DNA of 64,000 nt. It comes from Bispira polyomma. Taxonomy: Eukaryota. The notes under the pieces were generated by a model that ran no database searches, was not told the DNA's origin, and saw only the letters and a program-made list of their open reading frames with translations. The DNA lies in assembly GCA_965649765.1 (NCBI GenBank), contig OZ287751.1, forward strand, positions 38,130,001-38,194,000, given 5' to 3'. Positions 28,334-55,161 of this stretch are shown piece by piece (the stretch's first letter is position 1; each line of letters opens with the position of its first letter). Both the position numbers and the translations under genes were made by a program.

Positions 28334-28407
28334 ATGAATGGGACACTAATTCCACATACACCAATTGCAGTAGACTTCTGGAAGGTTCGAAAATGCCCTT
28401 CAGCCAA
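28334..28407 (+). CDS. DCLRE1B: 5' exonuclease Apollo/SNM1B, coding exon 1
   Basis: [24 protein letters not shown](K), cf. human [16 protein letters not shown]. Donor gtgagt at 28408; upstream acceptor ttttcag at 28236. Confidence 0.95.
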
Positions 28408-28927
28408 GTGAGTAATAAACGTTAAAAAAGCAATACACATATATATCCTGAAGGTGACTGACAGCAAAATATGTCGCTCACTAAACATTTAACTTAAGTC
28501 AAACATTAATTTTTGTTGAAATACAGTGAAACCCTGTTGGGTCGAATCTGAAGGGACCATAACTATTTGTTGTACTTAACAGAAATTCTACTTAACAGAG
28601 TAAATTACAATTATAAATACAGCAATGGCACCTTTAAATAATTTCTACTAACCAGGTAATTCCACTTATCGAAGTTCTACTTAAAGGGGTTTGACTGTAA
28701 TTTAATTTAATCTATTATCTTAAGTTTCTGTTTATTGTGGGCAGATAATAACAGTAATTAAGTGTTTTACCTTTTGATGATTTTTCTGATTTTGATATAA
28801 CAGGTTCACAACTTGTTGTCTTTTGGTTTTACATATAAACCTAACTAATGTGTCATAGAAAAGTCAAAATAAAGTCAACCTGTATGCTATTGCAGTAATA
28901 TACAAATATTGTGTCATTTGTTGCCAG

Positions 28928-29042
28928 GCTGTTTTTTCTTACTCATATGCATGCGGATCACACAGTTGGACTGACACCATCATGGGCCCGTCCTCTGTAT
29001 TGCAGTCCTGTCACAGCCAGATTGCTGAAACACAAGTTCAAG
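28928..29042 (+). CDS. DCLRE1B: Apollo coding exon 2 (HxHxDH metal-binding motif)
   Basis: [38 protein letters not shown]; ccag| acceptor and |gtcagt donor. Confidence 0.95.
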
Positions 29043-29362
29043 GTCAGTTCAGTGACACCCCCCCCCCCCCCCCCTACTGGCCGATTTCACTTCCTTGTTT
29101 TGCTTGTTCTTACTTTTTTGTTTGGGTTTATCGCACTGTTCAACACAATATTGGTTCTCCTTCTACAGAATCTAATCTAATCCAATTAAACTTTTATATT
29201 CCTTAATCCTTATTAAGGCGAATTCTGAGGACTGAGGTGCATATTACATATTCATATTCATGTCTCGCAACGTCCTCTTCCGGAAAGTGTACCTATCCCA
29301 GAATTGACTTTAATAACTTTAAATGTGGTACCTGGTAAATGTGTCTTATTCTATTTGTTTAG

Positions 29363-29538
29363 ATCAAAGACAGTTTGATCCATACTCTGGAGGTTGGGGA
29401 GAGTCACACTGTCTTCCTAGATGACACTCACTGTGAGCAGATGACAGTGACACCCCTGGATGCTCACCACTGCCCTGGATCCGTCATGTATCTCTTTCAA
29501 GGTTACTTTGGGACCATACTACACACAGGGGATTTCAG
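29363..29538 (+). CDS. DCLRE1B: Apollo coding exon 3
   Basis: [15 protein letters not shown]...[26 protein letters not shown](R); tttag| acceptor and |gttaga donor. Confidence 0.95.
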
Positions 29539-30339
29539 GTTAGAATCTATACCTTTTGGCTACTGCAGTAAACCATCCATATAGTGAACAGGGGTATCTC
29601 TAGCATGTATATTCAAAATATAAAGAAACATTTGACTTTGGCGGCTGCCATCTTTAATATCTGTGTCATTTTTTAAATAGGCTATATCTCGAAAATGCTG
29701 CGAGATAGAGCGAGCCAAAATGTTCTCTATAAAGAAGTGTTCACAGTTTAGAGGGTCTGTACAAATACACAACTGGTTGCAAAAACAGGACTGGCAAAAA
29801 GTTTTCATTATATAGAGGTGTTAACTATTAAGGTGTTCTGTATCAGAGGTTTTGCTGTGTCCTACACTGGGGATTTCAGGTATTTTAATAATTAAGGCAT
29901 GGAATGGTAGGAAAATACATGGGCGGGGTAGTCACTTGATCAGATCCAGGTACCTCAAGCTTAGTAAAATAGTTAGGTAAACATACAAAATATTTGGGTA
30001 ACAGAAATTCTGTAAATTTTTTAATTGAAATTTGAAAATCAATAAGAAAGTAAAATGGAACAAAAACACAAACCAAATAGTTAAATAGGGCTGTTTATAC
30101 GATGGATACATTAATTTTGTAGTGTCAAGCAAAGTATGTAAAGTGTATGCTGTAAAAAGAATAGAATATATTGACGACCTATCAGTGTTGACCTGACCAT
30201 CAGAGAGTGACTAGTCAACACATAATTTTAGGTGTTGGAAGGGCGCTATTTGAAATACATGCCAGAATAGTACAGTATTAAAGTGAGGAACAATCCTATT
30301 TTCTGAGCATTTGACCAGGCACCATGAAAATGTGTGTAG

Positions 30340-30668
30340 GTTTATAGTCAAATATCACCTCTATTGAGGTCACAGTCGACTTTACAGTTTACACCCCCAG
30401 CATGTGTTCTTCTATTTGTCGACCAATTGTTCAGTCTCAGCTCCCTCAGGAAGCATACTAGCCATGCTACCGCATACGGTGCAGAAAGACTACTACACAC
30501 AGTAGAAGTCAGGTACCCATTGATACACCTGGGTAGAGAGGGACAACTTAGTGTAAAGTACCTTGTCCAAGGGTACATCTTCAGGCCTGCGGCAAGGTTC
30601 GAACCTGGACCCTTAGATCCCTCTTGGATTAAAAGTCTTGAGACTTTAACCGCTAGGGCACAGAGACC
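30340..30668 (-). mobile_element. tRNA-derived SINE, family B (CORE-like central domain)
   Basis: GGTTCGAACC B-box and CCTTGGACAAGGTACTT...CTACCCAGGTGTATCAATGGGTACC on -. Confidence 0.75.
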
Positions 30669-30749
30669 ACAAATGTCACAAATCTTAGTGCGTTTGATCA
30701 GCATTCGAAAGGATGAAATTGTGTGAACTTGTTCTTATCTCCACTTCAG

Positions 30750-30922
30750 GTATTGCAGGAGCATGTTTGATGCAGGACCCCTTAGTACAGGACTTCGTAT
30801 CGATGTGCTCTACCTTGATAACACTTACTGTAACCCTGCGGTAGAACTGCCCACCCGTCAGCAAGCCTTAGAGGAAATCATCAGTATTATGGAGAGGCAT
30901 CCACAGCACAGGGTTCTTATAG
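30750..30922 (+). CDS. DCLRE1B: Apollo coding exon 4
   Basis: YCRSMFDAGPLSTGLRIDVLYLDNTYCNPAVELPTRQQALEEIISIMERHPQHRVLI(G), cf. human LYLDNTNCNP...HPQHNIKIG. Not in the ORF track. Confidence 0.93.
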
Positions 30923-31231
30923 GTACAGTCAAACTCTGAGAACTTTGAGGATAAGTGAAATTACCTCGTTAGTGGAAGGTATTTTAAGGTCCCATTGTCA
31001 TATTTATAACTGAGAGCTGTCTTGTTAAGTAGAATATCTGTTAAGTAGAACAAATATTTGTGGTCCTTTCAGATTTGACTTAACAGGGTTCCACTGTATT
31101 TTAAGAAACTCAGCCAAGTAGGCCATACACATGGTGATTTCCCGTCGATGACAATTTGTCTGAGATGAAAAATTGCAGAATTTAGATTTGCAGCACATAA
31201 GAGGATTTGAAGGTTTGTTAATTACCATACA

Positions 31232-31482
31232 TTTGAATTTGGATATTTAACGTCCACTCTAGTACCTTTTAGTAGGTTATATTGGGACGGGTAGTTGGAA
31301 ACACTGGAGGAAACACTGCATACAGTCGGTCAAGGTTCTGCAGAGAAACCAGCGGCCCACAGTAAGGAACTACCACCTTTCCCACATAGGCATTGACGGG
31401 ATTCGAACTCACGCCGCCCAGAGGTGAGAGACCAGTGATTGTGAAGCGCAGTGCTTGCTAACCACTAGGCCACCGCGGCCCC
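31232..31482 (-). mobile_element. tRNA-derived SINE, family A, full length
   Basis: A/B boxes; perfect 15-bp TSD GTTAATTACCATACA (31217-31231 and 31483-31497). Confidence 0.9.
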
Positions 31483-31529
31483 GTTAATTACCATACAAGG
31501 GATTGGCAATACTATTAAACTTTTGAAAC

Positions 31530-33201
31530 TAATTAAGCGTCCCTTGAAAAGGGCGCTTATTTGGTTTCACCCCTGGTTTTCTCGCTGCCGCCGCCGCTGC
31601 ATGGTCTTCCTTGAATATCTCCTTTAATATTATCTGCATCAAAATATTTTTGGCAGTTCTCTTAACCAGGAGTGGGAAATTTTTTGATATTCTTGGCTTT
31701 GAACTTTGGCCTACTTAAATGTCAGGTGACCCTGGGGGTGTAAAAGTGCTTGTCACTAGGTTTTCTCAGAAAGTATTCATCATAGCTCAATGAAATTTGG
31801 TATGTACCTTGGTAAGGCAATTTTCAAGACGGGAGACGCTAATGAGATTAATCGGATGATAATTGACCGATTGCCAACCGATTGATTTTTATTGAAATGC
31901 GAAAAATCGGTACTTTTTTGCTATCTCAGAAACTATTGGGATTTGGGCTTTTTCTTGGTATAAGTTATTCATCTACTTTTTGATTTTATGTATGATGTAA
32001 AAATCTCACAGTTCTAAGTCCAGTACTCAATGAGTACTGAGTACTTCAAATGAGTAGTTTGCTCTATTTTGCTCTATCTTGCACTTTTATCAACTTTTCT
32101 TTTGAAGTACTTGTCATAGTTCAATGAAATTTAGCATGCACATTGCAAATACCAAAGCATAGATGTCCGTAAATTTTTAGATCAATGTGGTGATAATTGA
32201 CTGATTGACAGGGTCGATCAATCATACAAAATGGGGAAAAAAATGTGTTGATGGGTGCTTTTTTGAGCGTGTGAGGATATTTTTTATTTTTAATTTTAGA
32301 CCAGTACATGCAGCGCGTAACTTTTAAAGAATAGCCTGAATTTTTATTTATTTTTTACCCCATCCAAAAATATGCGATCGTTACTGATATAAAACGATTT
32401 CAATTTCGAAAATTTAAAAAATTAAGGGTTTTTTTTTAAAGCGTCCATTATCTCGGAAACAGTGCTAAATAGAGCGATTTCGAGCTCATTTTCGACCCAC
32501 AGGGTTGATTTTGCCAATATGTAAACTTTCAAAAAATTTTCAATTTTGGCGGCCATCTTGAATTTCTGCGTCTTTTTCGAAAATGTCAAATATCTCGGAA
32601 ATGGTGCTAGATAGAGCGATTTCGAGCTCATTTTCGACCCCCAGGGTTGATTTTGCTCATATGTAAACTTTAAAAAAATTTCAATTTTGGCCGCCATCTT
32701 GAATTTCTGCGTCTTTTTCGAAAATGTCTGTTATCTCAGAAACGGTGCTAGATAGAGCGATTTCAAGCTCATTTTCGACCCATGGGGTTGATTTTGCTTA
32801 TATGTAAACTTTTAAAAAAATTTTGGCGGCCATCTTGAATTTCTGCACCTTTTTCGAAAATGTCAAATATCTCGGAAACGGTGTTAGATAGAGCGATTTT
32901 GAGCTGATTTTCGACCCACAGGGTTGATTTTGCTTATATGCAAACTTTCAAAAAATATTTTAATTTGAAGTAATTTTTGATTTGGGCAACCATCTTCAAT
33001 TTCTGCGTCTTTTTCGAAAATGTCTATTATCTCGGAAATGGTGCTATATAGAGCGATTTCGAGCTTAAATTTGACCAAAAGTGCTGATTCTGCTTATATG
33101 TCAACTTTTAAACAATATCAAACCTTGTACACTAAACAATTTCATTATTATTTTAACTTTAGGGACGCTTCGTTTTTGTTATCAAAAACTGTTTTCTAGT
33201 T
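31530..33201 (+). mobile_element. Complete HINE-like element with ~4 units of the 142-bp array (DCLRE1B intron 4)
   Basis: 5' AAGCGTCCCT / 3' AGGGACGCTT subterminal inverted repeat; 3' hairpin GTTTTTG-TTAT-CAAAAAC; CTAGTT end. Confidence 0.8.
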
Positions 33202-33473
33202 TACCTTGATTTGAGTCCAATTACTGTTAGCGATAAGTCTAGTTGGCAAAACTTTGAAAGAATAACCATATTTTCTCCAAAACTACAGGTCCAACAGACT
33301 TCCTGTTTCCAGATACCTGGAGAGTTATAATATGGAGAAACATATTTGACAAAAAGTACTTACTCAGTTTTAAATCAGTAATATGTATATTCTTTTCATA
33401 AAGCATTAAATATCTTGTAATTCTGTACAGTGTCTGTATATGTTATAACTGTGTATGGTTCCGGCATTTTCAG

Positions 33474-36374
33474 GAATGCGTCAGCTTGGCAAAGAAGACC
33501 TGCTTGTAAAATTAGCTAAGCACTTCAAGGTATATGTCAGTGTTGAACCATGGCGCCACACTCTGTATGAACAACTGGAGCTGCCCCCAATTTTCAGCCA
33601 GGATGAAAACACAGGTAGAATCGTCACTGTGGACACAAACAAATTCAACCTAAAGCTTCTGGAGCGGTTTAATCTAGAATGTCCAACCATTGCTGTCTTA
33701 CCTACTGCACTGTACACGATTTTGCATCAGAACCAGTTGCAAACCAGGAACTCAAATGTGTATGTAGTACCTTACTCGGACCATTCGTCTTTTCACGAAC
33801 TCAAGGAGTTTGTGTCTCAAGTTCGGCCGGGAAAGGTTATCCCTGTCGTTAAGGAAAAGAGGCACGAAGGAAAGGTGTTGGCCACAAGTAATATGAGTCA
33901 TTTTCACAGTTGCCTCGATCCCTATAACTCTCCCCTCGACAGCATAGAAATACCAGACTCGGTGAAAGCCTTTATTGAAAACCGTAACGTCTCAGAGAAG
34001 CGGCCGTCGAGCTCACTGACGAGAATAGAAGCAGCCCATCTGAGGAAACCTCTGTTCTCAAGGAAGATCTCATCGGGTGACAGGAGTGTGAAAGGTGTTC
34101 AGTACGACAGTTCTCTGACTGGACAAAGTGTATGTAGTAGTAGTACTAGTAGTGGTAGTAAAGTAGAACCTGAAATGCCTTTACTGGTTGTAGAGCCTCC
34201 CCCTTGTATCATCACTTCATCCGCCGGATATGAGGAATTTCCTCCTGTGATTAACATAGTGCCATTGGAGGAGCCATTAGAGGAGACCACCAATACGACG
34301 GTGCAGCACAGCAGAGTAGGTACTGTGCCAGAGGAGCAGGGTATGCTAAATACAGAGGGCACCAATCAACAGGAGTCAACATTTCCACACCAGGTGGCAA
34401 CACAGGTCTCCTCTGAGCAGAGAAGCAGCAATGGTCAAAAAGAGGGATCAGAAAGGAGTGAACATCAGTCGGTATCACAAGATGACGATGTAGAGAGGGA
34501 TGATTATGCAGGTGAATCTGCACATATACATAGTTCTAGTGGTAGTGGACAAGGGACTTCGACTGATCTTACAACAGAGCGTAATGATATGGTTGGCATA
34601 CAAGATGGTGGATGGGTATTACTTCAAAATGAAATAAAAACAGAGCCATGTGGTACTAATGCAGTAGTTTGTGATTTCCCAGGACAAGCCATTCAAAGTC
34701 ACAGCTTATTCTGTCTCAGTAGTGTCAAAGTTCAACCGCTGGACAGTTTGCAATTTGAGGCTGGAATTGTATCTGATCCAGTGCTCGATTCTGCTGCTGA
34801 TGTATATAAGGTGTTTAATATATATAACATGCCGACAAGTACAACTACAGAAAGCATTGAGACACATGAAGTAGGCCATCATCAGCATGGCCTTTTAAAG
34901 ATAGATGCTACAGATGACGAACATTCTGTGAACTGCACTAGTCCAGTTGATGTGCATCACCCAGATGGCCAGAAAGAATTTCTACCCAGAATAGTCCATG
35001 TTTCCAGTGTTTGTGATAGTGAAGAAAATCCACATCTCGATGTCATGAGAGGAAAGTCTCCTAGAAAAAGGGGTAGACCAAGAAAGCGTAAAAGACAGAT
35101 TGTCCAAAACAGCAGGCCAGTAGTGGAAGGAAGCACAGTGCCAAAAAGGGGAAGACCCAAAAAACTGACACCCGTAACTGAAAGTAGTAGCTCTGGGGAA
35201 GCATTGAAGCATGTGTGTAATAAAAGGGAGCCGTTAAAGGTCAAGATTGTGTGGGGACCTAGGCCAGATGAAGCTTTGACTACCAGGGCTAGAACATACA
35301 GCCAATACCAGCCATGTGAAAGGAGAAAACTGACCCCAGAAGGTTCCTGTGAAACGAAATATCCATCAAAACTGAAAGACAGCATGTGTGAAGACAGTGT
35401 CTATGACCTTGACCAACATGAGAAGGATCATCCCTGCCCACACGATAAAGTAAATTCCTGTGACACCCATGCTAGTATTATTAAGGATAATGGTATCCAT
35501 CAAGAGAAAGGGATAATCCATCGTAAAAGAGGTCGACCAAAAGGCAGCATAAAAGTGTTCAGGCTTAGCAAGAGTGTTTATGTAGACAGACTTAATAGAG
35601 GTCCAGAGAGTGGATCAGTCCATAACAGTGATAAGCCTAATGAATGTGATTCTACTACCACATATAGTGCATTTGACAGCAGTAAAGCTATAAGTGGGAA
35701 AGTGAAAGGCAACAGAAGTTACCTTCAAAGGGGCAAACGTTCACGCACTAATCAGGAAGATAGAACGTCACTTATAACTGATAATGGAAGTACGTCACTT
35801 CTAACTGATAATGAAAGCACGTCATTTATAGCTGATAATGTAAGTACGTCACTTCTAACTGATATTGGAAGCACGTCACATATAACTGATAATGTAAGTA
35901 CGTCACTTCTAACTGATAATGGAAGCACGTCACTTATAACTGATAATGTAAGTAATCAAATGAACAAGAAGGTAGATATAGGTTGTATAAGAGTTTCTGT
36001 GGATGACAAGTGTTGTCAGACAGATCAACCAGGGGACATAGGGCTTAGTAGTGGAGAGAACGGTGACATTATAGAGGATAAGTTAATATTAGGTTCCGTC
36101 TCCATGATTGAAAACACTGAACAATGTGAGGCACAAGAATGTGAAGCACAAGAATGTGAAGTACAAGAAGATCTTCTTCAGGTCAACGATGACAGATGTT
36201 GTTGGACAGGCTGTAGTGAAGGAACAGAGACAAATCATTTGTTAGGTGATACCATAAAGCAGAATAATGGCAAAAACCAAGAGAATGGCAATTCAAATGT
36301 GTCCATAGAAGAGTCAGGGTTAGGACTGCGCCATTTTGTAGTTGAGAGTCAGAGCTTCTCGCAAGAAAGTGAAG
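33474..36374 (+). CDS. DCLRE1B: Apollo coding exon 5: beta-CASP domain plus long low-complexity region with AT-hooks
   Basis: ttttcag|GA ATG CGT CAG CTT GGC AAA GAA; LGKEDLL, PTIAVLPT, VPYSDHSSFHELKEFV, IPDSV; donor GAAG|gtaaat at 36375. Confidence 0.9.
35765..35953 (+). repeat. Coding 27-bp tandem repeat, 7 copies (TSLLTDNGS-like)
   Basis: ACGTCACTT(A/C)TAACTGATAATG(G/T)AAG(T/C) units. Confidence 0.9.
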
Positions 36375-36464
36375 GTAAATATAGCTTATTTTGACATTTT
36401 AAATCAATAAGAAAGTTGATTTTTTAAATCTTTATTGTATGTATCTTTATGGCATGTATATTAA

Positions 36465-36794
36465 CCCTTTTGACCCCTTTGTTGTCGGCAAGTAGACGGC
36501 AGTTGTTACTCCCAGGACCTATGTCTGTCGGCAAGCAGATCACAATTGTTACTCCCAGGACCTATGTCTGTCGGCAAGCAGTCAACACCCAAAAATAATA
36601 TTTTATTTTTCTTCAGTTCCTCACAGTAGGAAATTGTTAGTACAGCAGACTCTCCTGGTAATAATACAGGTGGTCGATATTTAATGCTGGAAGTAGTTTG
36701 TGGTATATGTTTTAATGACTTTAGCTATCTGAAACCTATTGTCAAAAAATCTCTTTCAATTCCTGCCGGTTGTTTTCTCCCAGTCACCAAAGGG
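36465..36794. mobile_element. piggyBac-like MITE
   Basis: TTAA|CCCTTT ... AAAGGG|TTAA; internal ~44-bp direct repeat. Confidence 0.65.
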
Positions 36795-37126
36795 TTAAGG
36801 TCAAACTGTAACTTTCAGAGGACGTGTCTTACTTTTAGATTGTAAACTTACCAGGAACATTGTTAGCTTGTGGTAGACTTATTTGTGTGTATTTTAAAAA
36901 ACATCTCTATTCTAATTTGAAATACTATGGGAATTTCAATTGTTTGAAGAATTGTGAATTATCTGAATTCCAATTTTCTATGGGTACATTTTAAACATTG
37001 TGTGTCTTAAAAAAAAAAAATTGAAAACTAAAATTTATTTTGTTTGCAATATTACCCCACAATTAATGCACAGTAAATTACAACTGCATGTGAATACACA
37101 ATGAATTTGTACCTTCTTTGTTTTAG

Positions 37127-37313
37127 CTGCAGAAGCAAAGGGTGAAGTATTGGAAGATATGTCACTTCATGGCTTTGTCCTTGCTATGACACAAAAAGAA
37201 AACGATGGGCAAGAACTATCATCCAAGAATGTAGAGGAAGACGAGGACAGGGTAGAACCAACATCTAAGACATCATCAGAAGTAACACAACAGATCTGGG
37301 GCGATGTCTCCAG
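37127..37313 (+). CDS. DCLRE1B: Probable Apollo coding exon 6
   Basis: ttttag|CT GCA GAA...TCC AG|gtatgt. Phase 1 in and phase 2 out bridge the two large ORFs exactly. Confidence 0.7.
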
Positions 37314-38121
37314 GTATGTGGGGATAGTAATGAAGTGGTGGACATTTACTGGCAACTGCAGTCTGTTAAAAAGCATCAAGTAGAACAAGTACGGATCAAG
37401 TCTTGGGTGTTTTCAAGTGTTAACAATGCAATGATGTTGTGTTGGCATATTTTTTAAAAACAGAAATTCATCCTGATGAACTTGCTGGTAATTGTTGCCA
37501 TTCTAGGCTTCAGAAAGAGTGGTACTTGCATTATATTACAGTGAAGTACAGTCAAACACCTTTAGGTAGAAGTCTAATAAGTGGAATTACCTGTAAAGTA
37601 GAAGTTATTTCAAAATCCCATTGTTATATCTATAATAAAATCTACCCTGTTAAGTAGAATTTCTGTTAAGTGGAACAAATTTTTGTGGTACCTTTAGATT
37701 CGACTTAAGAGGGTTCCACTGAATAGTACACTCATGTAGTGGTAACACACCCGCCTCCCACCTCTTTGGGTTTGAATTTCGGTGCTGGTGTTTATGTGGA
37801 ATATTTTTCTGTAGACTTGGTGAATGCCGGTTGGTTTACCCTGTTCTGATGTCCTCCACCATTAAGCTGCCCATTGATATATGACACTAGGGCTGCATTG
37901 GTACTGCTGGTATTGTCGTTGCAGGACCAATTTATGTGCCCACCGGCTATAAAAAGTTAATACAGGAATTTTGAAAATGCAGGCTTTTTACTGCAAATCA
38001 ATAACAAACATTATGTATTTAATCATAAAATGATTTTATGTTGGCTTTTAAAACTTTTGGAGTTTTTAGTTGTTTTTAGGCTTAACACATAAGTTGTTTT
38101 GATTTGGTTTTGCTGGTCTAA

Positions 38122-38795
38122 TGGTCTAAACACACACAGCCGCATCCACATTTTTTTCGGAATGTGATTTAAATCCCATATCGAATTTATCTTCTTTATA
38201 GCTATACTAAGACGAATAATTCAGCAGGATCATGCGCAATGAAGATGTTTTTTTTTTGTTGTAAATTTACTGGGAAAATGATGTAAATGTACATATCATC
38301 AACAATAGCCCATCAGTAGATTTAATATCTTTTTCTTATTTACCTCTTTCAAGGTATGTGCATTTTTTATTTTTGTTAAAACATAGAAATGATAAAAAAG
38401 CACACTTAAACTTGCATACTGTGTGTAAACATAGACATTTAAGATACATTACACTACCAGAAAAAAATATGTTAAACAACTGTCACTACTTTTTTTCACT
38501 GACTATTTATTTAACTGACTGTAAAAACAGTAAATTTCGACAGGCACCAATGAGCCAAAAATAAATGTAAACAAACCTGGAATCTCAAATTTCCCCCAAA
38601 ATACACTTGTTTTCAGAAATCTGCTGAATATATTTGTCCTAGATTCAGAAAAAAAATCTGTGTAAAAAAAATTTGGGTGGGATCTATAGATCCGCATCCA
38701 GATTCGGCTTAGTGTGTCCCCCTACAGTGTGCATGATGTACAACCGGATCGGTGATCCGAATGCGCATCTGGATGTGGCTGTGTATATCTTGACC
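38122..38795. mobile_element. Harbinger-like MITE family with GGATCC-rich ends
   Basis: GGTCTAAACACACACAGCCGCATC ... GATGTGGCTGTGTATATCTTGACC; relatives at 61107-61451 and 62790-63022. Confidence 0.55.
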
Positions 38796-38974
38796 TTTAT
38801 AATTCCTGTTCTTTAAGGTGCGCTCAATTTGCAGCTTTTGGGTTAATTTTGGGGCAGTATCCAGGACTACCGTCCCACCATTAAATAACATAAAACATGT
38901 TTAAAGCGATGTTAAATTTAAACTTAACTGTAAGTGTCTCTGATCTTTTACTCTTTTTCTGTTATTTTATTCAG

Positions 38975-41900
38975 ACTGAACGAACAAACTGGTACTATGG
39001 ACATACAAGATAATATTCATGCTTACATGGAATTACCAGATGAAAATCAAAACGTGACGGGTAACAAAAGTACGAGTGCCAAAGCATCGAGTGTTACACA
39101 AGAAAAGGTCACAGTTAAGCATGGTGACTGCATTAGTGACTCAGATACACATAATAACAGTGGTAATGATGTCAATAAGCCCAGTAGGGCAATTATTTAC
39201 AACTCAAATGGTAAACCAGTTCCTTCCACGACAAATGTGAGGGTGAGTATTATTGGTGCTGACATCTTATTCGGTACAGTAACACAGAATTATTCTACCA
39301 ACAAAGACACTATAGAAGAGGTAACCATTGAACCAGGGAGGTTTAATGAGGTCAATAAAGACACTATTGGAGAAGTAACCATTGAACCAGGGAGGTTTAA
39401 TGACAGTATGGAAGAAGTAACGATTGAACCAGAGAGGTTTAATGAGGTCAATAAAGACACTATGGAAGTAGTGACCAGTGAACCAGAGAGGTTTAATGAG
39501 GTCAACAAAAACACTATGAAAGAAGTAACCAGTGAACCAGAGAGGTTTAACGAGATCTACAAAGACGCTGTGGAAGAAGTAACCAGTGAACCAGAGAGGT
39601 TTAATGAGGTCAATAAAGACACCATGGAAGTAGTGACCAGTGAACCAGAGAGGTTTAATGAGGTCAACAAAGACACTAGAGGAAAAGTAACCAGTGAACC
39701 AGGGAGGTTTAATCAGTTCAACAAAGACACTAGAGGAAAAGTAACCAGTGAACCAGGGAGGTTTAATGAGGTCAACAAAAACACTATGAAAGAAGTAATC
39801 AGTGAACCAGAGAGGTTTAACGAGATCTACAAAGACACTGTGGAAGAAGTAACCAGTGAACCAGGGAGGTTTAATGAGGTCAACAAAGACACTATGGAAG
39901 TAGTAACCAGTGAACCAGGGAGGTTTAATGAGGTCAACAAAGACACTATGGAAGTAGTAACCAGTGAACTAGGGAGGTTTAACAAGGTCAACAAAGACAC
40001 TATGGAAGTAGTAACCAGTAAACAAGAGAGGTTTAATGAAATCAACGAAGTAACCAGTGAACCAGAGAGGTTTAATGAGATCAACAAAGTAACCAGTGAA
40101 CCAGAGAGGTTTAAGGAGATCCACAAAGAAACTACTATGGAAGAAGTAACCATTGAACCAGAGAGGTTTAACGAGATCTACAAAGACACTGTGGAAGAAG
40201 TAACCAGTGAACCAGAGAGGTTTAATGAGGTCAATAAAGACACCATGGAAGTAGTGACCAGTGAACCAGAGAGGTTTAATGAGGTCAACAAAGACACTAG
40301 AGGAAAAGTAACCAGTGAACCAGGGAGGTTTAATCAGTTCAACAAAGACACTAGAGGAAAAGTAACCAGTGAACCAGGGAGGTTTAATGAGGTCAACAAA
40401 GACACTATAGAAGAAGTAACAAGTGAACCAGGGAGGTTTAATGAGATCAACAAAGACACTATGGAAGTAGTAACTAGTAAACCAGAGAGGTTTAATGACA
40501 CTATGGTAGTGGTAACCAGTGAACCAGGGAGGTTTAATGACACTATAGAAGAAGTAATCAGTGAACCAGGGAGGTTTAATGATATTAACAAAGGAACCAG
40601 TAAACCAGGGAGGTTAAATGAAATTAAAAATGGAGAAGTCACAAATGTCAGTAGTGTAGAGTTTTCTGATCACACAGATGGGCAATCTGACAGGAATGTT
40701 CAGTTGATAGTTGAAAATAGAGCAGTGACATCCATGGTTGGTAAACCTTCCATATCCAGGGTTGAGAACTTCGAAAAACCATCCACACCCAAGATTGGTA
40801 GGAACAACCAATTGGTGAACCAAGAAGTAGCAGTGACTGAAGAAAAGGCCAAAGACAACAGCTGCATTGGAGATGTAACTGAGTCTATTTTTACTAAACA
40901 GTCAGCATCATGGAATAAAAGTGTGCTTGATTCAGTTTCTGATATATTTAATTTCTCTGATGAGTATGATGGCATAGCAGCATGTGAACCTCACAGTGGT
41001 TGCGGACAACATAATGACTATGGTGAAGTGCTTAAAGAATCTTCAGACAAATCAGCAGCAGAAGAAGATAGGAATGAAGAAAGGGGAGTGAGACATTCAG
41101 ATCAGAACATGCGCATGGTTGGTTTGAGTAAAGTGTATATCAGGGCCAAGTCCCTGGATAGAGAACTGACTAAAACAGGTGACGTTTTAAACAGCAGTAG
41201 TTTGACAGGTTCTGTTTTATCAAAGAGGAGTGTTAAAAATCCATCTAATGGTCAACTTTCATCAGAAAAAAGTTCATCTAACTTGGTCTTTTCCTATGAG
41301 TCAGTCAGATGTTCAGACAATGGAATAAATGTGAAAAATGTTCAGAGGCCTTTGTTTGATTGTACAGAACACCAACAGCCCAACAAGAAAGAAGAAATAG
41401 CTGAGCGAAATGTAATAAAGAAGAAAAACAAAATGGAACATAGAACAGACATACATAGATTTGGATCAAATAAATCCAAGCAAATCTCTCCGAGGGTCAA
41501 AACAAATCCCCCGTTGCAACAGTTAAAAGAGCTGCAAGTTGTTCTGGGTAGAAGTGTGGCCACATCTAAGATGACTAGATGTAATGCAGTTCCATTGAAA
41601 GTAAGTAAGTCAAGTAGAGTGTTAAGTCATGCAGGTGACAAGTATAAAAAAAAAATTGGACCTAAGTTTTACAGTGAACATGCTGCAAAGTCTCCTCCTG
41701 TGCAGGATCTCAATAAAGGTTTAAACAGTGTAGAATATGAAGCCAAAAACTTTGACATGGAGGTAGAGGTATCTCCTAGGTTAATTAGTAAAGATAGAAA
41801 AGTCACATCTGAAGTTAAAACAAGGTGTACAGAGGAGCAAGCAGAAGAGAGGACATTACTTAGTTCAGAGAAAGCAGGACCCTGTCTCTCTTTAAGTACA

Positions 41901-42722
41901 CTGAAAAGCCCAGTCACATCTGATGATCAAACAGACAAGATGGACATCAGCCTGAAGCATAAGGACTCTTTGGGTGTTTCTGCCAGCAGCTTGACTGAGG
42001 AGTTTACTCCAGCCTTGTCATTGATGGAGCCTGGTAAAGTACACCGTGATACAATTGACATCAGCAGAAAACCAATGAAACGTAGTTTTAAACAATCTAA
42101 GTTAGGTATGCAGAAGAAACAAGGCAGGAGTTCATTAGATGTAGCTGATGTCTCTTCTAGAAGTCGCAAAGCTGACTCGTTCTATGTGAAGACATTGAAG
42201 GGCTCTTGTCGTACTCCAAAAACTGTGCAATCTTGTAGTGCAAGCAATAGCTTGGGGCCTATTTGTGCAAAGGACCGCAGCATCCATGATTGGGTGAACT
42301 CGACCATTGATTGTCTTAAACCATCAAACCTGGGCAGCAACAGCAGCACATCATATTCTGCTGCTTCTGTACATTCTCCTGCACTCTCTGCAGGTGAGGA
42401 AGCTGAACTCTGGCCGTCATCCACCATTGAGCTCCTGATAAACCAAGAAGTAATGTTGTATAGGAACAGCCACGATGGTGTGACGAACAAGGTGTCGTGT
42501 AATTTATGTCCATTATCAAAGCGCCACGTAATACGAGAGGTTACTAGCCCAGGTATAGAACTTCTGGTGTTGGAGGAGTCCTTGAAATATAAGTCATATA
42601 AGGAAAAGACCTGTAACATCAGCTGTTCACCAAGTGCTTTGAGTGTTTTACCTAATCAAAAAAGGAAGTCGCTATTGCAAGGTTTTAAACCTGTATTTAA
42701 TGTGAAGCATGCCACACCTTAA
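38975..42722 (+). CDS. DCLRE1B: Probable Apollo terminal exon 7 (1248 codons, with an 18-aa repeat array)
   Basis: Strong polypyrimidine acceptor ttttattcag|A CTG AAC in phase 2; 3.7-kb uninterrupted ORF. Assignment to DCLRE1B rests on splice phase, not homology. Confidence 0.68.
39300..40625 (+). repeat. Coding 54-bp minisatellite, ~26 copies (NKDTMEVVTSEPERFNEV)
   Basis: Visible in both DNA and translation; all length variants keep the frame. Confidence 0.92.
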
Positions 42723-43669: not shown

Positions 43670-43988
43670 GGTCTCTGTGGCCTAAGTGGTTAGAGTGTTT
43701 GACTTTGGATCTGATGGTCCAGGTTTTATCCTCGCTGCTGGCCTGGTGATTATATCCTTGGACAAGGTACTTTACACAAAGTTGTCCCTCTCTACCCAGG
43801 TGTATATATATAAAATGGGTACCTGGCCGCTGATGGGTGTTCGTCTTTGTGCGCCGTATGTGGCAGCACGGCTAGTATGCTTTCTAAAGGGAGCCGAGAC
43901 TGAAAAATTTGTTGGCAAGTGGAAGAACCCAGGCTGGTGGTGTAAATTGTAAAGTCGAATAATAGCTCAGTAGAGACTATAAACCTAC
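43670..43988 (+). mobile_element. SINE family B
   Basis: Similar to 30340-30668, 49704-50027 and 55162-55530. Confidence 0.75.
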
Positions 43989-45682
43989 ACACAGAGGTAC
44001 AGATAGAAATCCAATTTAGTGTAAAAGCTGACTGTACAAAATCTTCCACAAACTTGCACGATTTGTATGATGTATATATTGGACTGTTTATGTGTAAAAA
44101 TAGTTGTTTAGACGCATGTTCATATATTACAAAGCAGTTTATACCTTGTTCATTCATATGGTATGTTTTTTACTTTCAGATGTTTATATACTTTTACATT
44201 TGTGTGTGTTTGTTCTGTTTTACAGATTCTGCCTTTCTGAAATCTGTTACCTGTTATTTTTGTTGAGTTAACCTATTTTTTTGGACAATACTCTCCAGTT
44301 GGTGGTATTTGGTCCTAAAGTTTACATTTTATGAAAGAGTTCATGTAACCCATAAATGTCAAGGACACAGACAATATTTTAATATTTTATTCTCATTACA
44401 GTGTAAAATGCCAATTTATCCCAATATTGGCTAAAGTATTTGTGTAATTTAGCATGAAAAAAACAAAGCTATTCTGTCCCTGTTTAACAATTGGTGATTC
44501 TGCATCAATTAAAATGTCAAGTACACAATATTTAATTATATTATTCTCATACAGTGTATAATGCCAATTGATCCCAATGTTGGCTGAAGGAGTTATGTAA
44601 CATACAATAAAAAAAGAAGATATTCTGTCCCTGTTTAATAATTGGGGATTCTGCATCACTATAAGACCACAAATGACACTTGTAGGCTGTAGCCCAAAGG
44701 GACAGATTATTCAGTGTAGACCTTGGTCCATATCCAAAAACATTCTTTGACTGCTATTTTTGTCATTTTACTGGGAGTCTTAGCCAATAAGATTGCTACT
44801 TACAATTTTAACAGCCAATGAACTTTGTTGATACAAAATATTAAGGGACAAGGTTCTCTGTAAATTGCTCCAACCTCCGTATTCCTAACTTTGACACAAT
44901 GTTTAACTTGTCTGTTTTGGAAAGATGCACTGACATACCTACAATATTAAGAAATGTAAAGAGGTTTCTCAGTAAATAGTCTCCAGTGTAACTTTTGGCA
45001 GTAAATAGTTAAACTCGCACACACAAGCTGGTTTGTGTTATTATAACAACTAAAATTAAAATGAAATATTCGGATAATAAAGGGTCGGATAACAGGGGTT
45101 CTATTTTACTTGTAATGTAGTTTAAGTTGTACAGCAGGTAAAATTGATAAATATACTTTGTATCCTATTGGAAGTTTGCAAATATATGCACAGTAGAACC
45201 TCTGTTAACTGAACTTTTTTATTATCCAATATTGATTTGTAAGTTGTAACACATTTCCATTAAAATGCCTCTTCTATTTGATGAACCTTTTATTATTTGA
45301 ACAAAGTATTCCTCTGCCAAAATATGTTTGGATAATAGAGGTTCCACTTTAACAGGTTTAGTTAAGCTTAGTTCACCAGTTGTATTAATCAAGCATTTAG
45401 CTTTATGTAAAGAGTAGTGCAATAGGTTTGGCCATACAATTGTAAATTATTTTGAAATAATAGTACAACCTCTATGGTAAGAGTGTTGCAAAATATAACC
45501 TGAAACCCCACAAACTAGACACCTAAGTACCTTTTCTTGTATCCATAAGATGCATCCGGTGGTTACTTTCTTTTAAACATGTTTATGCTGCCGATCATAG
45601 ATAAATTTTGTTCGTTAACACATTTTTAAATTATTATTACCCTCGATATATTCAAACATCCTAGGATTTTGTACAAATTATC

Positions 45683-46139: not shown

Positions 46140-48340
46140 AAGACATACAAATAATACAAGATTACAATATACACAATATACATAAAACATAATGTGTGGT
46201 GAGTATTAACATCATAATAGTATCCTATCTCTTTAGTTGTTAATTTTTCCCTACTATATAAACCTGTACTTACATCTGTCGCAAAATAAATTTAACTTGT
46301 TTCTGTATTTCACTATCAACTCCTTTTAAATTGGTGCCTGAACTAACTGTAGTTTGGTAAATTTGCAATTTTCCTTTCATCATCAGTAAAAAATCAGAGA
46401 GCAGTGGTGTTTTTTCTTCAGTTCGTGATTTATTCAAAATCCATTTGCCTAGCAATAGCATAATATTTTGGATATGATTAAGTACACTCCGTTTCCCTTC
46501 CTTAATATCTATTCCAAACAAGATTTCACATACTGTGTATTCTTGTCTGTTATTTATATGTAACACCTTGTGTATCCACTTTTGTATTTCTTTCCAGAAG
46601 TTGTTACTTTGACTACAAAAATATAAATGATGATCTATTGTGTCTGTTAATCCACAGTAATTACAATTTGGTGTATTTTTTATTTTCCACTTATATAGGT
46701 TATAATTACAGTCAAGCACTCTATTTATAATTTTGTATTGGAATGTCTGTAGGTAAGGTTCCATCCCAGTTAGATGTGATAATTTAAAAATTTTGTACCA
46801 TGGGGCAGTTTCAAGAAATGGGTAGGTTTCAATCCATTTTTCCACTGATGTTGGTGCTTGCCATTTTTTGTTGATAACTGCCCAATATAGGACCTTGTTC
46901 TTTACTTTTGTCAAGTCAACTAATTTGCCCTTCACAAAAATTTTTACTTCCCTACTTTTTGTTGAACATGAAACCTGTGTGTTTTTCATTTTTTCTTTCC
47001 ATAGTTTCGGTATGGCACTTATAATCTTATTATAACTCAATGTATCTATTTTCAAACCAGACTTCTCAATAAATTTGTCTCTTTGTAATATCTGACCTTG
47101 ATAGTTTGTTATGTCTGCCAAAACTAAATTTTTTGTACGAGTTTCCAATAATTTTAGCTCTTTTGCTTGTATAGGTTTGTCTTTTATACATATATATTTA
47201 TTGTCGAATATAAATTCATTATAAATTTCATTTGTAGTGTTTGGAGGAACGGCATGAAATTCTAACCAGCAATCAATAACTTGTTTATGGAAGGGTGTTA
47301 ATCCCTTATCTCTGTAAAAGGCTGGCAGTTTATTTTTAATTTTATACTGCTGTATATTTAACAGGTACCATGTTAGGTTTTGCCATTTTCCTTGTGGATC
47401 TGATTTTGTAACTAATTTTTTAATCCATTTAATTTTTGAAGTTAAGTGTATGCCATAAATATCTGGCATTTTGAGACCGCCCCATTGAATATGTGGCAAT
47501 TATGGTACTTCTTTTAACTTTGGCTTTTTTATTGTCCCATAGAAAGTCAAATAACATCTTATCTATTTTTTGTAATACAGATGATGGGCAATAACATACT
47601 GATAGTAAGTAGTTTATTTGTGGCAAGACTAATGACTTAATTATTAAAATTTTGCCTTTCCATGACAGTTTTCGACTTCTCCAAATATTCAAGATTGTTT
47701 CCATTTTTTTCAGCTTTGTATCATAGTTAAGTGTGTGGATAATTTTAGATTTGTTGAAAACCATATTCCCAATGTTTTAAAACTGTTTTGATTGATACTG
47801 ATTTTGTCTATAGTTTTTGGTAATGTTATACTTTCAAATTTATATGTACCAACGGGAATTGCCTCGGTTTTTTCCATATTGATTTTCAGACCAGAACAGT
47901 GCTCAAATTTATGTAAAAGTGATATTAATTGAACAATGGATTCAATGTTATTTACAAATACTGTTGTATCATCAGCTAGTTGACATATTTTATATTCTCT
48001 CTTTTCTATCTTTATACCTACTATATTCTGATTATTTCTGATTTTGATTGCCATAATTTCTGCAACCAATATAAAGAGGAACGCTGATATTGGACACCCT
48101 TGTCTTATACCCCTACTTAACTCAAAGTAGTTTGAAAAATAGCCATTATTACCAACACAGGATTGTATTTTTGTATATAGTATTTTTATCCATTGCAAAA
48201 AACCTGACCCAAAGTTAAAAGATTTTAATGTTCTGAAAAGGAATGGCCATTCCACACTGTCAAAAGCTTTTTCAAAGTCAACAAGAATAATATACCCAGG
48301 TATATGTTTCAAATCTGTGAAAGACATAACATCTTCAATA
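46107..48340 (-). mobile_element. 5'-truncated L1/Tx1-group LINE (ORF2 RT + CCHC, two frameshifts, poly(A) tail)
   Basis: DFEKAFDSV, GIRQGCPISAFLF, QLADD, CNYCGLTDTIDHHLYFC across ORFs 48327-47710, 47764-47429 and 47499-46270; T28 tract at 46107-46134. Confidence 0.92.
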
Positions 48341-54139: not shown

Positions 54140-55090
54140 GTCCTGACCCCCAAATCTACCTATTATTAACAGCAAACAATGCACAAGATCTGCTTTGCAT
54201 CCTTGCCAGATGTCTCAACTCTATCTAAGCTCAGATGAATTTTGCCAAACTTAAACTCAATCCTGACAAAACTAAATTTATACTAATCGGCACTAAAAAA
54301 GACAGGGATAAATCTAAATCTCTGTTTCTTAATAACCTACTCGGCAATGACGTACTCCAAGCTGATAAAGTAAAGAAATTGGGTGTCACTTTTAACTCCC
54401 TCTTGTACTTTAATGATCATATCTCTAATATACGCCAATTTTGCTACCTCTATATTCACGACCTCAAGATAATCAGATAACACCTATCCCATCAAACTGC
54501 CATAGTCATAGCAAATACACTCGTAAGCAGTCGATTGGACTACTGCAATTCTCTACTTTGTGGACTAAAGAAGTACCAGCTGCAAAGGCTACAATCAATT
54601 CAGAATCACCTGTGCAGAGTTGTGTGCCGTGTGGGATTTCGCATTCGTACGAGTTCTTTTCTCAAAAAGCTCCATTACCTGTCAAGTATACCGCATCATT
54701 TTCAAGACCAATGTTTCTACATACAAAGCTGTAAACACCTTTGTCAGCCCCCATATCTTGCCTCATTGTTGTTTTTCAGGAGGCTTATCAAGGGAAACAG
54801 AATTTCAGTCAATGGTACAAGAACTCTTAAACGGATTGGATCATATGCATTCTCTATTGCAGCACCCACCCCATGAAATAATTTACCAACTAATATAAGA
54901 TCCCTCACTAGCTTCAGAAGTAACCTTAAGACCCATTTTTTCACCCTCGCTTACCCTCCATAGACCCGTTTCTCCTCAATATCACCCCTGATCACAAATT
55001 TGCTTTGGAAACGGACTATGATTTTAACAACTCTGTCAATGATGTTGCACTTTAGAAGATGCCTGGCATCAATTAGGTGCATTCAAAATC
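54140..55090 (+). mobile_element. L2-group LINE 3' fragment
   Basis: DPQIYL, KLKLNPDKTKFILIG, KLGVTFNS, VSSRLDYCNSLL, AFSIAAP, with stops and frameshifts. Confidence 0.85.
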
Positions 55091-55161
55091 ATTTTATATC
55101 AGATCATACACCACCAAAGTCACTGTTTGGGAAAAGAAGGGTTCCCTGTTGTTTATACAGT

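What the first reader, a model, noticed from the sequence alone, without database searches (positions are those of the whole stretch)
28334..42722. Giant Apollo/SNM1B: ~2457 aa with a ~2100-aa C-terminal extension
Seen: seven phase-compatible exons (74+115+176+173+2901+187+3748 = 7374 nt) with intact catalytic motifs (HMHADH, HCPG, TGDFR, LDNT, YSDHSS). Similarity to Apollo ends near IPDSV (~aa 345), yet the frame stays open for a further ~6.3 kb over three exons. Established: human Apollo is ~530 aa and reaches telomeres through a short C-terminal TRF2-binding YxLxP motif. I found no such motif by eye here. Inference: a lineage-specific, mostly disordered tail has been added and may provide a different recruitment mechanism.
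Basis: partly seen in the sequence, partly recalled or inferred. Interest (0 to 1): 0.75.

Follow-up and report, generated by a model that had tools for sequence, protein, structure and literature searches.

The report
Giant worm Apollo nuclease gene
This worm's only Apollo (SNM1B) DNA-repair/telomere nuclease gene most likely encodes a roughly 2,450-residue protein, in which a very long floppy linker with DNA-binding hooks and tandem repeats separates the normal enzyme head from the short tail motif that Apollo proteins of other animals also carry; no RNA data were available to prove the splicing.

Summary
The seven exons exist as described: all have AG/GT borders, the frames are open, and the total is 7374 nt. 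Exons 1-5 are an Apollo orthologue. PDB Apollo is the best match for exons 2, 3 and 5. It is the only Apollo found in this genome; SNM1A and Artemis lie elsewhere.

No RNA run was found, and the three runs laid were genomic DNA, so the exon 5-6-7 joins are not shown directly. Three indirect lines support them.
- Exon 6 has the best donor and a top acceptor in the 2.6-kb gap, and it is the only strong frame-restoring exon there.
- Exon 6 has tail-like codon use.
- The last about 30 residues of exon 7 resemble the C-terminal motifs of other Apollos. They rank 1 of 527 ORF ends, and 1 of 2000 shuffles reaches the top-5 score. A generic HMM was not significant.

The lack of YxLxP is expected outside amniotes (PMC8653790). 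Long tails are common in invertebrate Apollos (up to 1340 aa). This size, the three AT-hooks (0 of 138 homologues) and the 26-unit repeat are unusual. The scan had already noted the AT-hooks on this same window (s1-607794), not on other DNA.

The parts
28334..28407 (+). Exon 1; starts with ATG ([16 protein letters not shown]...), donor gtgagt
   Evidence: tblastn of three Apollo orthologues matches their residues 1/2-24/25 here at 60% identity.
28928..29042 (+). Exon 2; metallo-beta-lactamase motif HMHADH
   Evidence: The best PDB match is Apollo at E 1e-14, against SNM1A at 8e-8. Pfam Lactamase_B_2 is weak.
29363..29538 (+). Exon 3; HHCPGS and TGDF motifs
   Evidence: PDB Apollo E 7e-24, against Artemis 7e-11 and SNM1A 6e-7.
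30750..30922 (+). Exon 4; YLDNTYC motif
   Evidence: tblastn tiles orthologue residues about 121-186 here.
33474..36374 (+). Exon 5 (2901 nt). The first ~165 codons are the end of the beta-CASP domain (YSDHSS; Pfam DRMBL at 33740-33856). The rest is an ~800-residue tail. Donor AAG|gtaaat. If this donor is not spliced, the frame stops at 36392-36394.
   Evidence: Pfam DRMBL E 2e-12; PDB Apollo E 1e-19. A homologous 1060-aa ORF in a relative aligns up to 3 residues before the donor. 0 stops in 806 tail codons.
35066..35083 (+). AT-hook 1 (KRGRPR, followed by RKRKR)
   Evidence: Regex match. Pfam AT_hook is below its cut-off for the region (12.5 bits against 17.4). 0 of 138 stored Apollo homologues have a basic-flanked GRP.
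35144..35161 (+). AT-hook 2 (KRGRPK)
   Evidence: Not conserved in the relative P0001.
35525..35542 (+). AT-hook 3 (KRGRPK)
35765..35954 (+). In-frame 27/54-nt tandem repeat (7 x 9 residues, TDNxSTSLL type) inside exon 5
   Evidence: Tandem Repeats Finder; translation.
37127..37313 (+). Exon 6 (187 nt; an alternative acceptor 6 nt further at 37133 also keeps the frame). It links the phases of exons 5 and 7.
   Evidence: The donor is at the 99.4th percentile of 175 GT sites and the acceptor at the 96.9th of 127 AG sites in 36375-38974. Among 160 frame-restoring open candidates, the two acceptor variants of this exon score 11.4/11.6 and the next best scores 3.0. Tail-type codon score is 0.46 per codon, against -0.32 and -0.24 in the other frames; 0 of 149 stop-free intron windows reach it. 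It is single-copy DNA between high-copy intron repeats.
38975..42722 (+). Exon 7 (3748 nt, stop included): 108 residues, then the repeat array, then 695 residues of sequence without detectable relatives, ending in the Apollo-type C-terminal motif
   Evidence: Single copy in the genome. No homologue in two large protein searches. AlphaFold pLDDT 33 with no secondary structure.
39299..40634 (+). Tandem array of 26 units ending in RFN/RFK/RLN (mostly 18 residues, EVNKDTMEEVTSEPGRFN type; units of 13, 14, 18 and 19 residues, all in frame)
   Evidence: Synonymous:nonsynonymous single-base differences among 18 full units are 196:588, so there is no sign of purifying selection on the peptide.
42633..42665 (+). 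C-terminal motif A (SALSVLPNQKR). It sits at the position of the frog LSLLP, lizard Y-x-L-x-P and invertebrate xSVIP/xRVIP motifs, 22 residues before the end.
   Evidence: Rank 5 of 65,726 six-frame positions with a matrix from 25 distinct instances of other species; alignment.
42690..42722 (+). C-terminal motif B (PVFNVKHA, then TP and stop); compare PVFNVKPL-end in an oyster and FSVKPL in hemichordates
   Evidence: Rank 25 of 78,347 positions; this falls to rank 2649 if the oyster NVKPL instances are left out. Combined A-then-B score is 19.3. The next best is 10.0 among the other 133 ORF ends of the window and 10.9 among 393 control ORF ends.
42374..42399 (+). Strong acceptor-like site inside exon 7 (pyrimidine tract + cag|G, first base 42394). 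It is in phase with the exon-5 donor at 36374 and with a donor-like site at 34511. It is a candidate for shorter isoforms; untested.
   Evidence: Crude score 9.0, the highest of all AG sites scored in the gene; sequence read.

Best explanation
This is the worm's single Apollo/SNM1B (DCLRE1B) gene.

Shown:
- Exons 1-5 encode a complete metallo-beta-lactamase/beta-CASP 5' exonuclease head of about 340 residues.
- The same fifth exon runs on, with no stop, into about 800 residues of low-complexity sequence. That sequence holds three AT-hooks and a 9-residue repeat.

Inferred:
- The exon-5 donor at 36374 is spliced to a 187-nt exon 6 and then to a 3.7-kb last exon.
- That last exon adds 26 copies of an 18-residue repeat, about 700 residues of fast-evolving disordered sequence, and the short C-terminal module (L-S-V-L-P, a basic patch, F-N-V-K) that Apollo orthologues of molluscs, brachiopods, hemichordates and frogs carry at their ends. 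In amniotes the same position holds the TRF2-binding Y/H-x-L-x-P motif.
- The 2457-residue product would therefore work like any Apollo: a nuclease head tethered by a C-terminal docking peptide to a partner on chromatin or at telomeres. The flexible linker is about four to five times longer than usual, and its AT-hooks could add direct minor-groove binding to AT-rich DNA.
- Shorter isoforms that keep head and docking peptide may exist beside it.
For: Gene identity:
- PDB Apollo beats SNM1A and Artemis for exons 2, 3 and 5.
- Three orthologues tile exons 1-5 without a gap.
- DRMBL domain, E 2e-12.
- The genome's other DRMBL loci are SNM1A and Artemis.

Tail of exon 5:
- It is contiguous with the domain, with 0 stops in 806 codons.
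- A relative has a 1060-aa homologous ORF (35% over 736 residues), with a conserved block just before the donor.

Join of exons 5-6-7:
- Exon 6 has the best donor and a 97th-percentile acceptor of the gap. It is by a wide margin the best of 160 frame-restoring candidates.
- Its codon use is tail-like, and 0 of 149 stop-free intron windows reach its score.
- There is no good donor between 36395 and 37126 that could serve a separate first exon; the best scores 2.1.

C-terminal module at the end of exon 7:
- The A+B score of 19.3 is top of 134 ORF ends in the window. 0 of 393 control ORF ends from 200 kb elsewhere reach it. So do 11 of 20,000 shuffles and 1 of 20,000 random 70-mers.
- In a motif-free local-alignment test against 78 non-redundant orthologue tails it ranks 1 of 527 ORF ends. 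12, 1 and 0 of 2000 shuffles reach the best, top-5 and top-10 scores.
- The alternative stop after exon 5 gives an end without this module.

Assembly: exact agreement with independent DNA contigs.
Against: - There is no transcript evidence at all. 0 of the 3 listed runs is on record as RNA, and the laid contigs cross exon-intron borders, so they are DNA.
- A profile HMM of 27 orthologue tails finds the end of exon 7 at the right place, but only at E 1.3, rank 3 of 4542 open segments.
- Motif B depends on the oyster-type instances (rank 2649 without them), and its proline is replaced by histidine here.
- I built the motif tests after seeing the resemblance.
- The 695 residues before the motif have no homologue anywhere, not even in the relative that shares the exon-5 tail.
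- The repeat units show no purifying selection (196 synonymous: 588 nonsynonymous).
- No AATAAA or ATTAAA lies within 1.3 kb after the stop.
- A very strong acceptor-like site inside exon 7 (42394) is in phase with exon 5, so a much shorter product is possible.
- The splice scores come from a crude consensus matrix with frequencies that I recalled, not from a trained model.
Confidence: 0.65

Rival explanations
1. One gene, but the main product is much shorter. Exon 5 would be spliced straight to the internal acceptor at 42394, either from its end at 36374 or from the donor-like site at 34511. By arithmetic this gives 1255 or 634 residues, and both keep the nuclease head and the C-terminal module. 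The 2457-residue form would be minor or tissue-specific.
For: The AG site at 42394 has the highest acceptor score of all sites scored in the gene (9.0), and a long pyrimidine tract precedes it. 634 residues is close to the median of 610 among 138 stored homologues.
Against: The phase match has a one-in-three chance. The 1139 codons of exon 7 upstream of 42394 are open, so they must be translated in some form. Exon 6, with its strong sites and tail-like codons, has no role in this model. The relative keeps its whole exon-5 tail open up to the donor.
Confidence: 0.17
2. Exons 6-7 form a separate downstream gene, or a transcript from an internal promoter, and Apollo ends at the stop 20 nt beyond the exon-5 donor (1152 residues).
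For: No RNA shows the join. Exon 7 has an ATG eight codons in. Its 695-residue body has no Apollo or other homologue. The relative's ORF also stops a few codons after the conserved block at the end of exon 5. 1152 residues lies within the known range, which reaches 1340.
Against: The end of exon 7 looks like an Apollo C-terminus (rank 1 of 527), while the read-through end of exon 5 does not. Exon 6 starts with a strong acceptor and so needs an upstream exon, and the only good donor in phase is that of exon 5. The frame of exon 6 is open from its first base in the phase that exon 5 hands over.
Confidence: 0.12
3. Exon 7 is a decaying or non-functional open frame, for example a recently expanded satellite-like repeat with flanks, that happens to lie downstream; the motif match is chance.
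For: The repeat units evolve as if unconstrained. The absence of stops in the array alone is weak evidence, P about 0.1. The HMM test gives E 1.3.
Against: There are 0 stops in the 695 codons after the array, against 49 and 89 in the other frames. All unit lengths are multiples of three. It is single copy. The motif tests point the other way.
Confidence: 0.04

Closest known systems
Apollo / SNM1B / DCLRE1B of vertebrates (about 530-590 residues; solved nuclease domains 5aho, 7a1f, 7b2x)
   Same: The metallo-beta-lactamase/beta-CASP head is N-terminal and starts at MNG, with all catalytic motifs. It is the best PDB match for three exons. A short motif near the C-terminus aligns with the frog LSLLP and the lizard Y-x-L-x-P.
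   Different: The protein is four to five times longer. There is no aromatic first residue in the motif, so no Y/H-x-L-x-P. It has AT-hooks and tandem repeats in the linker. The C-terminal 60 residues gave no PDB match.
Long-tailed invertebrate Apollo orthologues, names as given by the sources (Elysia 1340 aa, Mercenaria 1191, Acropora 1141, Ruditapes 1089, Sinanodonta 1041, Lingula 956, Saccoglossus 939, Dreissena 927)
   Same: Same head, a long low-complexity tail, and in many of them the same two-part ending (xSVIP/xRVIP, basic patch, FxVKP[LV] at or near the end).
   Different: The model here is nearly twice the longest one seen. 0 of 138 have AT-hooks. None has this 18-residue repeat. Limit of the comparison: the searches could only see proteins up to 1447 aa, 1690 aa or 2184 aa, so other giants may exist unseen.
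P0001, an unnamed relative's 1060-residue open frame (genomic ORF call, source 'ena')
   Same: It is homologous to exon 5 from the acceptor to 3 residues before the donor. That includes about 500 tail residues at 27% identity and the closing block L-x-L-R-x-F-V-x-x-S-Q-S.
   Different: It has no AT-hooks at the aligned places.
AT-hook proteins (HMGA type)
   Same: It has three K/R-R-G-R-P-K/R cores with basic flanks.
   Different: The motifs are embedded in a nuclease tail. Pfam AT_hook stays below its cut-off (12.5 bits against 17.4). DNA binding is untested.

Membership tests
SNM1 / beta-CASP metallo-beta-lactamase nucleases | Metallo-beta-lactamase motif H-x-H-x-D-H and the further metal ligands | tested here: met
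   HMHADH in exon 2, HHCPGS in exon 3 and TGDF at the end of exon 3. These align with the Apollo chains of the PDB.
SNM1 / beta-CASP metallo-beta-lactamase nucleases | beta-CASP / DRMBL domain | tested here: met
   Pfam DRMBL PF07522, E 2.2e-12, 47.5 bits against a cut-off of 22.
Apollo (SNM1B) subfamily | Closer to Apollo than to SNM1A or Artemis | tested here: met
   E-values against Apollo, with the next subfamily in brackets: exon 5 start 1e-19 (SNM1A 1e-5); exon 3 7e-24 (Artemis 7e-11); exon 2 1e-14 (SNM1A 8e-8).
Apollo (SNM1B) subfamily | Catalytic domain at the very N-terminus (unlike SNM1A) | tested here: met
   The ATG at 28334 opens [16 protein letters not shown], as in the orthologues, and a stop lies upstream in frame.
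Apollo (SNM1B) subfamily | One orthologue per genome beside SNM1A and Artemis | tested here: met
   The DRMBL search of the whole genome gave 4 matches at 3 loci: this one, an SNM1A-like one and an Artemis-like one. Only the best candidates are scored by that tool, so a very diverged copy could be missed.
Apollo (SNM1B) subfamily | TRF2-binding Y/H-x-L-x-P motif near the C-terminus (defined for amniotes; PMC8653790) | tested here: not met
   No Y-x-L-x-P or [FYH]-x-L-x-P in exons 5-7. L-S-V-L-P sits at the aligned position. The paper places the motif in amniotes only, so it does not define the family outside them.
Apollo (SNM1B) subfamily | C-terminal module of non-amniote Apollos (hydrophobic-x-V/L-I/L-P, basic patch, F-x-V-K-P-L/V end); my own description, which I did not find in print | tested here: inconclusive
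   For: (rank 1 of 527 ORF ends; 1 of 2000 shuffles for the top-5 score). Against: HMM E 1.3; P replaced by H in motif B; the tests were designed after the resemblance was seen.
Apollo (SNM1B) subfamily | 5'-to-3' exonuclease activity and a telomere or crosslink-repair role | not testable with these tools
   Needs enzyme assays and genetics.
AT-hook DNA-binding motif | R-G-R-P core with basic flanks, recognised by Pfam PF02178 | tested here: inconclusive
   Three KRGRP[RK] matches. Pfam gives 12.5 bits, below the 17.4 cut-off, with 2 stretches.

The most novel reading that the evidence does not exclude
The C-terminal peptide through which amniote Apollo docks on TRF2 did not arise new in amniotes. 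It is the remodelled form of a much older two-part C-terminal module (hydrophobic-x-V/L-I/L-P, basic patch, F-x-V-K-P-L end) shared by worms, molluscs, brachiopods, hemichordates and frogs. Apollo would then have been tethered to a partner through its extreme C-terminus long before the vertebrate TRF2 pocket existed. This worm shows how little the linker matters: the module survives at the end of a 2100-residue disordered spacer that has picked up AT-hooks and a 26-unit repeat, giving the longest Apollo seen in these searches.
Probability: 0.4. Interest if true: 0.55.

Novelty: new variant of a known kind. Interest (0 to 1): 0.42.

Why it matters
Apollo is the nuclease that creates the protective overhang at leading-end telomeres in mammals. 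How it is recruited outside vertebrates is not known.

If the model holds, this gene gives two testable leads.
- A conserved invertebrate C-terminal module lies where amniotes have the TRF2-binding motif. It could be used to fish for the ancestral partner.
- The gene is a natural case in which the nuclease and its docking peptide are separated by more than 2000 disordered residues carrying AT-hooks. That bears on how much linker length and added DNA-binding motifs matter for tethered nucleases.

If the long form is not made, the locus is simply an ordinary long-tailed invertebrate Apollo, and a warning about joining long open frames without RNA.

Tried and rejected
Transcript evidence:
- The look-up of sequencing runs listed 3 runs, none on record as RNA.
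- The one read-laying run (33400-39300, chosen to span both disputed junctions) showed genomic contigs only. There was no joint at 36374/37127 or 37313/38975. The listed joints all lie inside high-copy intron repeats.

Homologues of the exon-7 body:
- None among the 8000 scored candidates of 686-2184 aa.
- None in 1.84 billion representatives.
- Only chance-level BLASTP hits to 25 Apollo homologues.
- The atlas's best score was 0.80, a level that shuffled proteins reach a third of the time.
- Pfam gave only low-complexity matches to the repeats (Suprabasin repeat, DUF3106), which I reject as compositional.

Other checks that settled nothing:
- CpG observed/expected gave no promoter signal at either the gene start or the gap.
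- No AATAAA or ATTAAA occurs after either candidate stop, which is uninformative.
- The C-Q-T motif that recurs at the end of exon 5 and in P0001 is absent from exons 6-7.
- The profile HMM of orthologue tails was not significant.
- The last 60 residues gave only an E=1 match to ribosomal protein uL13 in the PDB.
- The two AlphaFold runs were single-sequence, so their low confidence is only weak support for disorder.

Literature:
- PMC8653790: I read passages and section 7. Its supplementary Fig. S4, which may show non-amniote Apollo ends, was not seen because supplements are closed.
- The searches were seen as listings and abstract starts only. None of the listed titles or abstract starts concerns an invertebrate Apollo tail, an AT-hook Apollo or an annelid Apollo. 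I claim no more than that about print.

The total length and the isoform lengths are arithmetic.

Full report
WHAT IS THERE. The window is AT-rich animal DNA (GC about 0.30-0.43). On the + strand, two very long open frames stand out: 33455-36394 (979 codons) and 38934-42722 (1262 codons).

Every internal border is AG|exon|GT. Each exon is open in the phase handed on by the one before. The sum is 7374 nt, which is 2457 codons plus a stop. I verified this exon by exon and did not join the exons for any search.

IDENTITY. The evidence that this is Apollo:
- Exon 2 carries HMHADH; exon 3 carries HHCPGS and TGDF; exon 4 carries LDNTYC; exon 5 carries YSDHSS.
- Pfam finds DRMBL in exon 5 (E 2.2e-12).
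- Against the PDB, Apollo is the best match each time: exon 2, 1e-14 against SNM1A 8e-8; exon 3, 7e-24 against Artemis 7e-11; start of exon 5, 1e-19 against SNM1A 1e-5.
- tblastn of three orthologues (P0004, Owenia P0040, Lingula P0031) tiles exons 1-5 in order without a gap. Similarity fades near 34015-34120.
- A DRMBL search of the whole 1.04-Gb genome gave 4 matches at 3 loci: this one, one whose ORF is closest to SNM1A and one closest to Artemis.
So this is the genome's one detectable Apollo gene.

THE TAIL IN EXON 5 NEEDS NO SPLICING ASSUMPTION. The beta-CASP end and the next ~800 residues lie in one exon.
- That stretch has 0 stops in 806 codons, against 60 and 111 in the other frames.
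- A relative's 1060-residue ORF (P0001, a genomic ORF call that begins in the intron) is homologous over 736 residues (35%). Weaker matches run to 3 residues before our donor, where both share L-x-L-R-x-F-V-x-x-S-Q-S. The tail alone gives 27% identity over 576 aligned positions, E 1e-22.
- The tail holds three KRGRP[RK] AT-hook cores at 35066-35083, 35144-35161 and 35525-35542.
- They are not conserved in P0001, and 0 of 138 stored Apollo homologues have a basic-flanked GRP.
- Pfam AT_hook stays under its cut-off.
- A 27/54-nt in-frame repeat lies at 35765-35954.

ARE EXONS 6 AND 7 PART OF IT? There is no direct evidence. The run search returned 3 runs, none on record as RNA. The laid contigs run across exon-intron borders (for example 35889-36527, 36758-37602 and 38680-39300), so they are DNA.

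The indirect evidence is as follows.

(a) Splicing and phase. Direct splicing of exon 5 to exon 7 would be out of frame, so a linker of length 1 mod 3 is needed.
- The gap holds 175 GT and 127 AG sites. The exon-6 donor scores at the 99.4th percentile and its acceptor at the 96.9th.
- Of 160 open, frame-restoring candidates, the two acceptor variants of exon 6 (37127 or 37133) score 11.4 and 11.6. The next best scores 3.0.
- The matrix is a crude consensus with frequencies that I recalled.

(b) Codon use. Exon 6 in frame has tail-like codon use (0.46 per codon, against -0.32 and -0.24 in the other frames). 0 of 149 stop-free intron windows reach that value, though these windows overlap heavily.

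(c) No upstream alternative. No good donor lies between the read-through stop and exon 6 (best 2.1). The strong acceptor of exon 6 therefore has no other obvious partner than exon 5.

(d) The end of exon 7 looks like an Apollo C-terminus.
- Listing the ends of the homologues showed two recurring motifs: x-S/R/C-V-I-P followed by basic residues, and F-x-V-K-P-L/V at or near the end. They occur in oysters, mussels, Lingula, hemichordates and unnamed transcripts. Frogs have L-S-L-L-P and Anolis has Y-D-L-S-P at the first position.
- The window ends ...ALSVLPNQKRKSLLQGFKPVFNVKHATP-stop. MAFFT aligns LSVLP under those motifs and PVFNV under the oyster PVFNV-KPL.
- Matrices built by rule from the other species gave these ranks: motif A, 5 of 65,726 six-frame positions; motif B, 25 of 78,347, falling to 2649 without the oyster instances.
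- The combined A-then-B score in the last 70 residues is 19.3. That is top of 134 ORF ends in the window, where the next is 10.0. It is reached by 11 of 20,000 shuffles and by 1 of 20,000 random 70-mers, and by 0 of 393 ORF ends in 200 kb taken from ten other chromosomes, where the top is 10.9.
- These tests were designed after I saw the resemblance, so I added a motif-free test: local BLOSUM62 alignment of the last 40 residues against 78 non-redundant orthologue ends. The end of exon 7 ranks 1 of 527 ORF ends for the best, top-5 and top-10 scores, and 12, 1 and 0 of 2000 shuffles reach them.
- Against this, a profile HMM of 27 ends hits the right place only at E 1.3, rank 3 of 4542 segments. 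The PDB search of the last 60 residues found nothing relevant.
- The read-through end of exon 5 does not score in any of these tests.

EXON 7 BODY.
- The body has 108 residues, then 26 units ending in RFN (13-24 residues, mostly 18), then 695 residues.
- The array shows no purifying selection (196 synonymous: 588 nonsynonymous), and its open frame alone is weak evidence (P about 0.1).
- The 695 residues after it have 0 stops, against 49 and 89 in the other frames.
- The body is single-copy, has no detectable homologue, and gives pLDDT 33 with no secondary structure. The exon-5 tail behaves the same way (single-sequence runs, so weak support).

COMPARISON WITH WHAT IS KNOWN.
Named invertebrate ones run from 533 to 1340 residues.
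- Of the 138 stored proteins the median is 610 residues; 18 have 900 or more and 4 have 1100 or more.
- Long tails are therefore ordinary for invertebrate Apollos. A product of 1152 residues (read-through stop) would be unremarkable, and 2457 would be nearly double the longest seen. Longer ones were invisible to my searches.
- Myler et al. 2021 (PMC8653790, passages and section 7 read) state that the Y/H-x-L-x-P motif of Apollo is present in amniotes and that the TRF2 pocket exists only in vertebrates. Its absence here is expected. Their Supplemental Fig. S4 was not available.
- I found no listed paper on invertebrate Apollo tails, AT-hook Apollo or annelid Apollo (listings only).

ALTERNATIVES.
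- Inside exon 7, a long pyrimidine tract plus cag|G at 42394 has the highest acceptor score in the gene (9.0). It is in phase with the exon-5 donor and with a donor-like site at 34511.
- By arithmetic, those joints would give products of 1255 or 634 residues that keep both the head and the C-terminal module. The phase match has a one-in-three chance, and the open frame upstream of 42394 still has to be explained by the long form. I rate this second.
- A separate downstream gene, or a dead frame, is made unlikely by the C-terminal module, the exon-6 signals and the open 695 codons.

VERDICT.
The gene is one Apollo gene, most likely (about 0.65) with a 2457-residue product.
- The tail is better read as a hugely expanded, partly lineage-specific linker between a normal head and the family's old C-terminal docking module than as a new recruitment device. 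The AT-hooks are the one addition that may change how it meets DNA.
- It is a new variant of a known kind, of moderate interest, and it needs cDNA.

Noticed in passing
window 36355-36748 and 37537-38915: Both disputed introns are largely made of very high-copy repeats. Summed contig depth is in the thousands to over 100,000, against about 15 or about 100 for the exons. Many internal joints appear in the DNA runs. A 43-nt tandem repeat lies at 36476-36581.
   Followed up: partly
window 30348-30726, 43686-44157, 55000-55418, about 49800: Copies of one interspersed repeat lie on both strands, with similar short ORFs (for example ...LAMLPHTV..., ...GQLSVKYL...). These copies produced several of the top chance hits of the motif-B matrix.
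   Followed up: no
window 46270-48327, minus strand: Three adjoining ORFs (409, 111 and 205 codons) look by eye like a reverse transcriptase of a LINE-type retrotransposon. No family search was run on them, and no cellular gene was evident between 42.8 kb and the window's end.
   Followed up: no
window 32000-33500 (intron 4): CpG observed/expected rises to 1.0-1.14, against 0.47 for the window. I take it for a young repeat or an unmethylated island inside the intron; not examined further.
   Followed up: no
window about 29055-29071: A run of 17 C lies directly after the exon-2 donor.
   Followed up: no
L003/L004 (G000:C5:69.03 Mb) and L005 (G000:C4:67.12 Mb): These are the genome's SNM1A-like and Artemis-like genes, seen through their DRMBL exons. 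The best PDB matches are DCLRE1A (7e-12) and Artemis (2e-6).
   Followed up: partly
stored proteins P0005, P0007, P0008, P0009, P0065, P0091, P0117 (bivalve-type Apollo tails): A further conserved tail motif, C-x-x-C-E-L/M-D/E-A-F, lies 20-60 residues before the end in several long mollusc Apollos. It is absent from the window's gene, which has only C-N-L-C at exon-7 residue 1175.
   Followed up: no
window 37127 / 37133: Tandem acceptors 6 nt apart (ttag|CTGCAG|AAG) have near-equal scores. Either keeps the frame, so two isoforms differing by two residues are possible.
   Followed up: no
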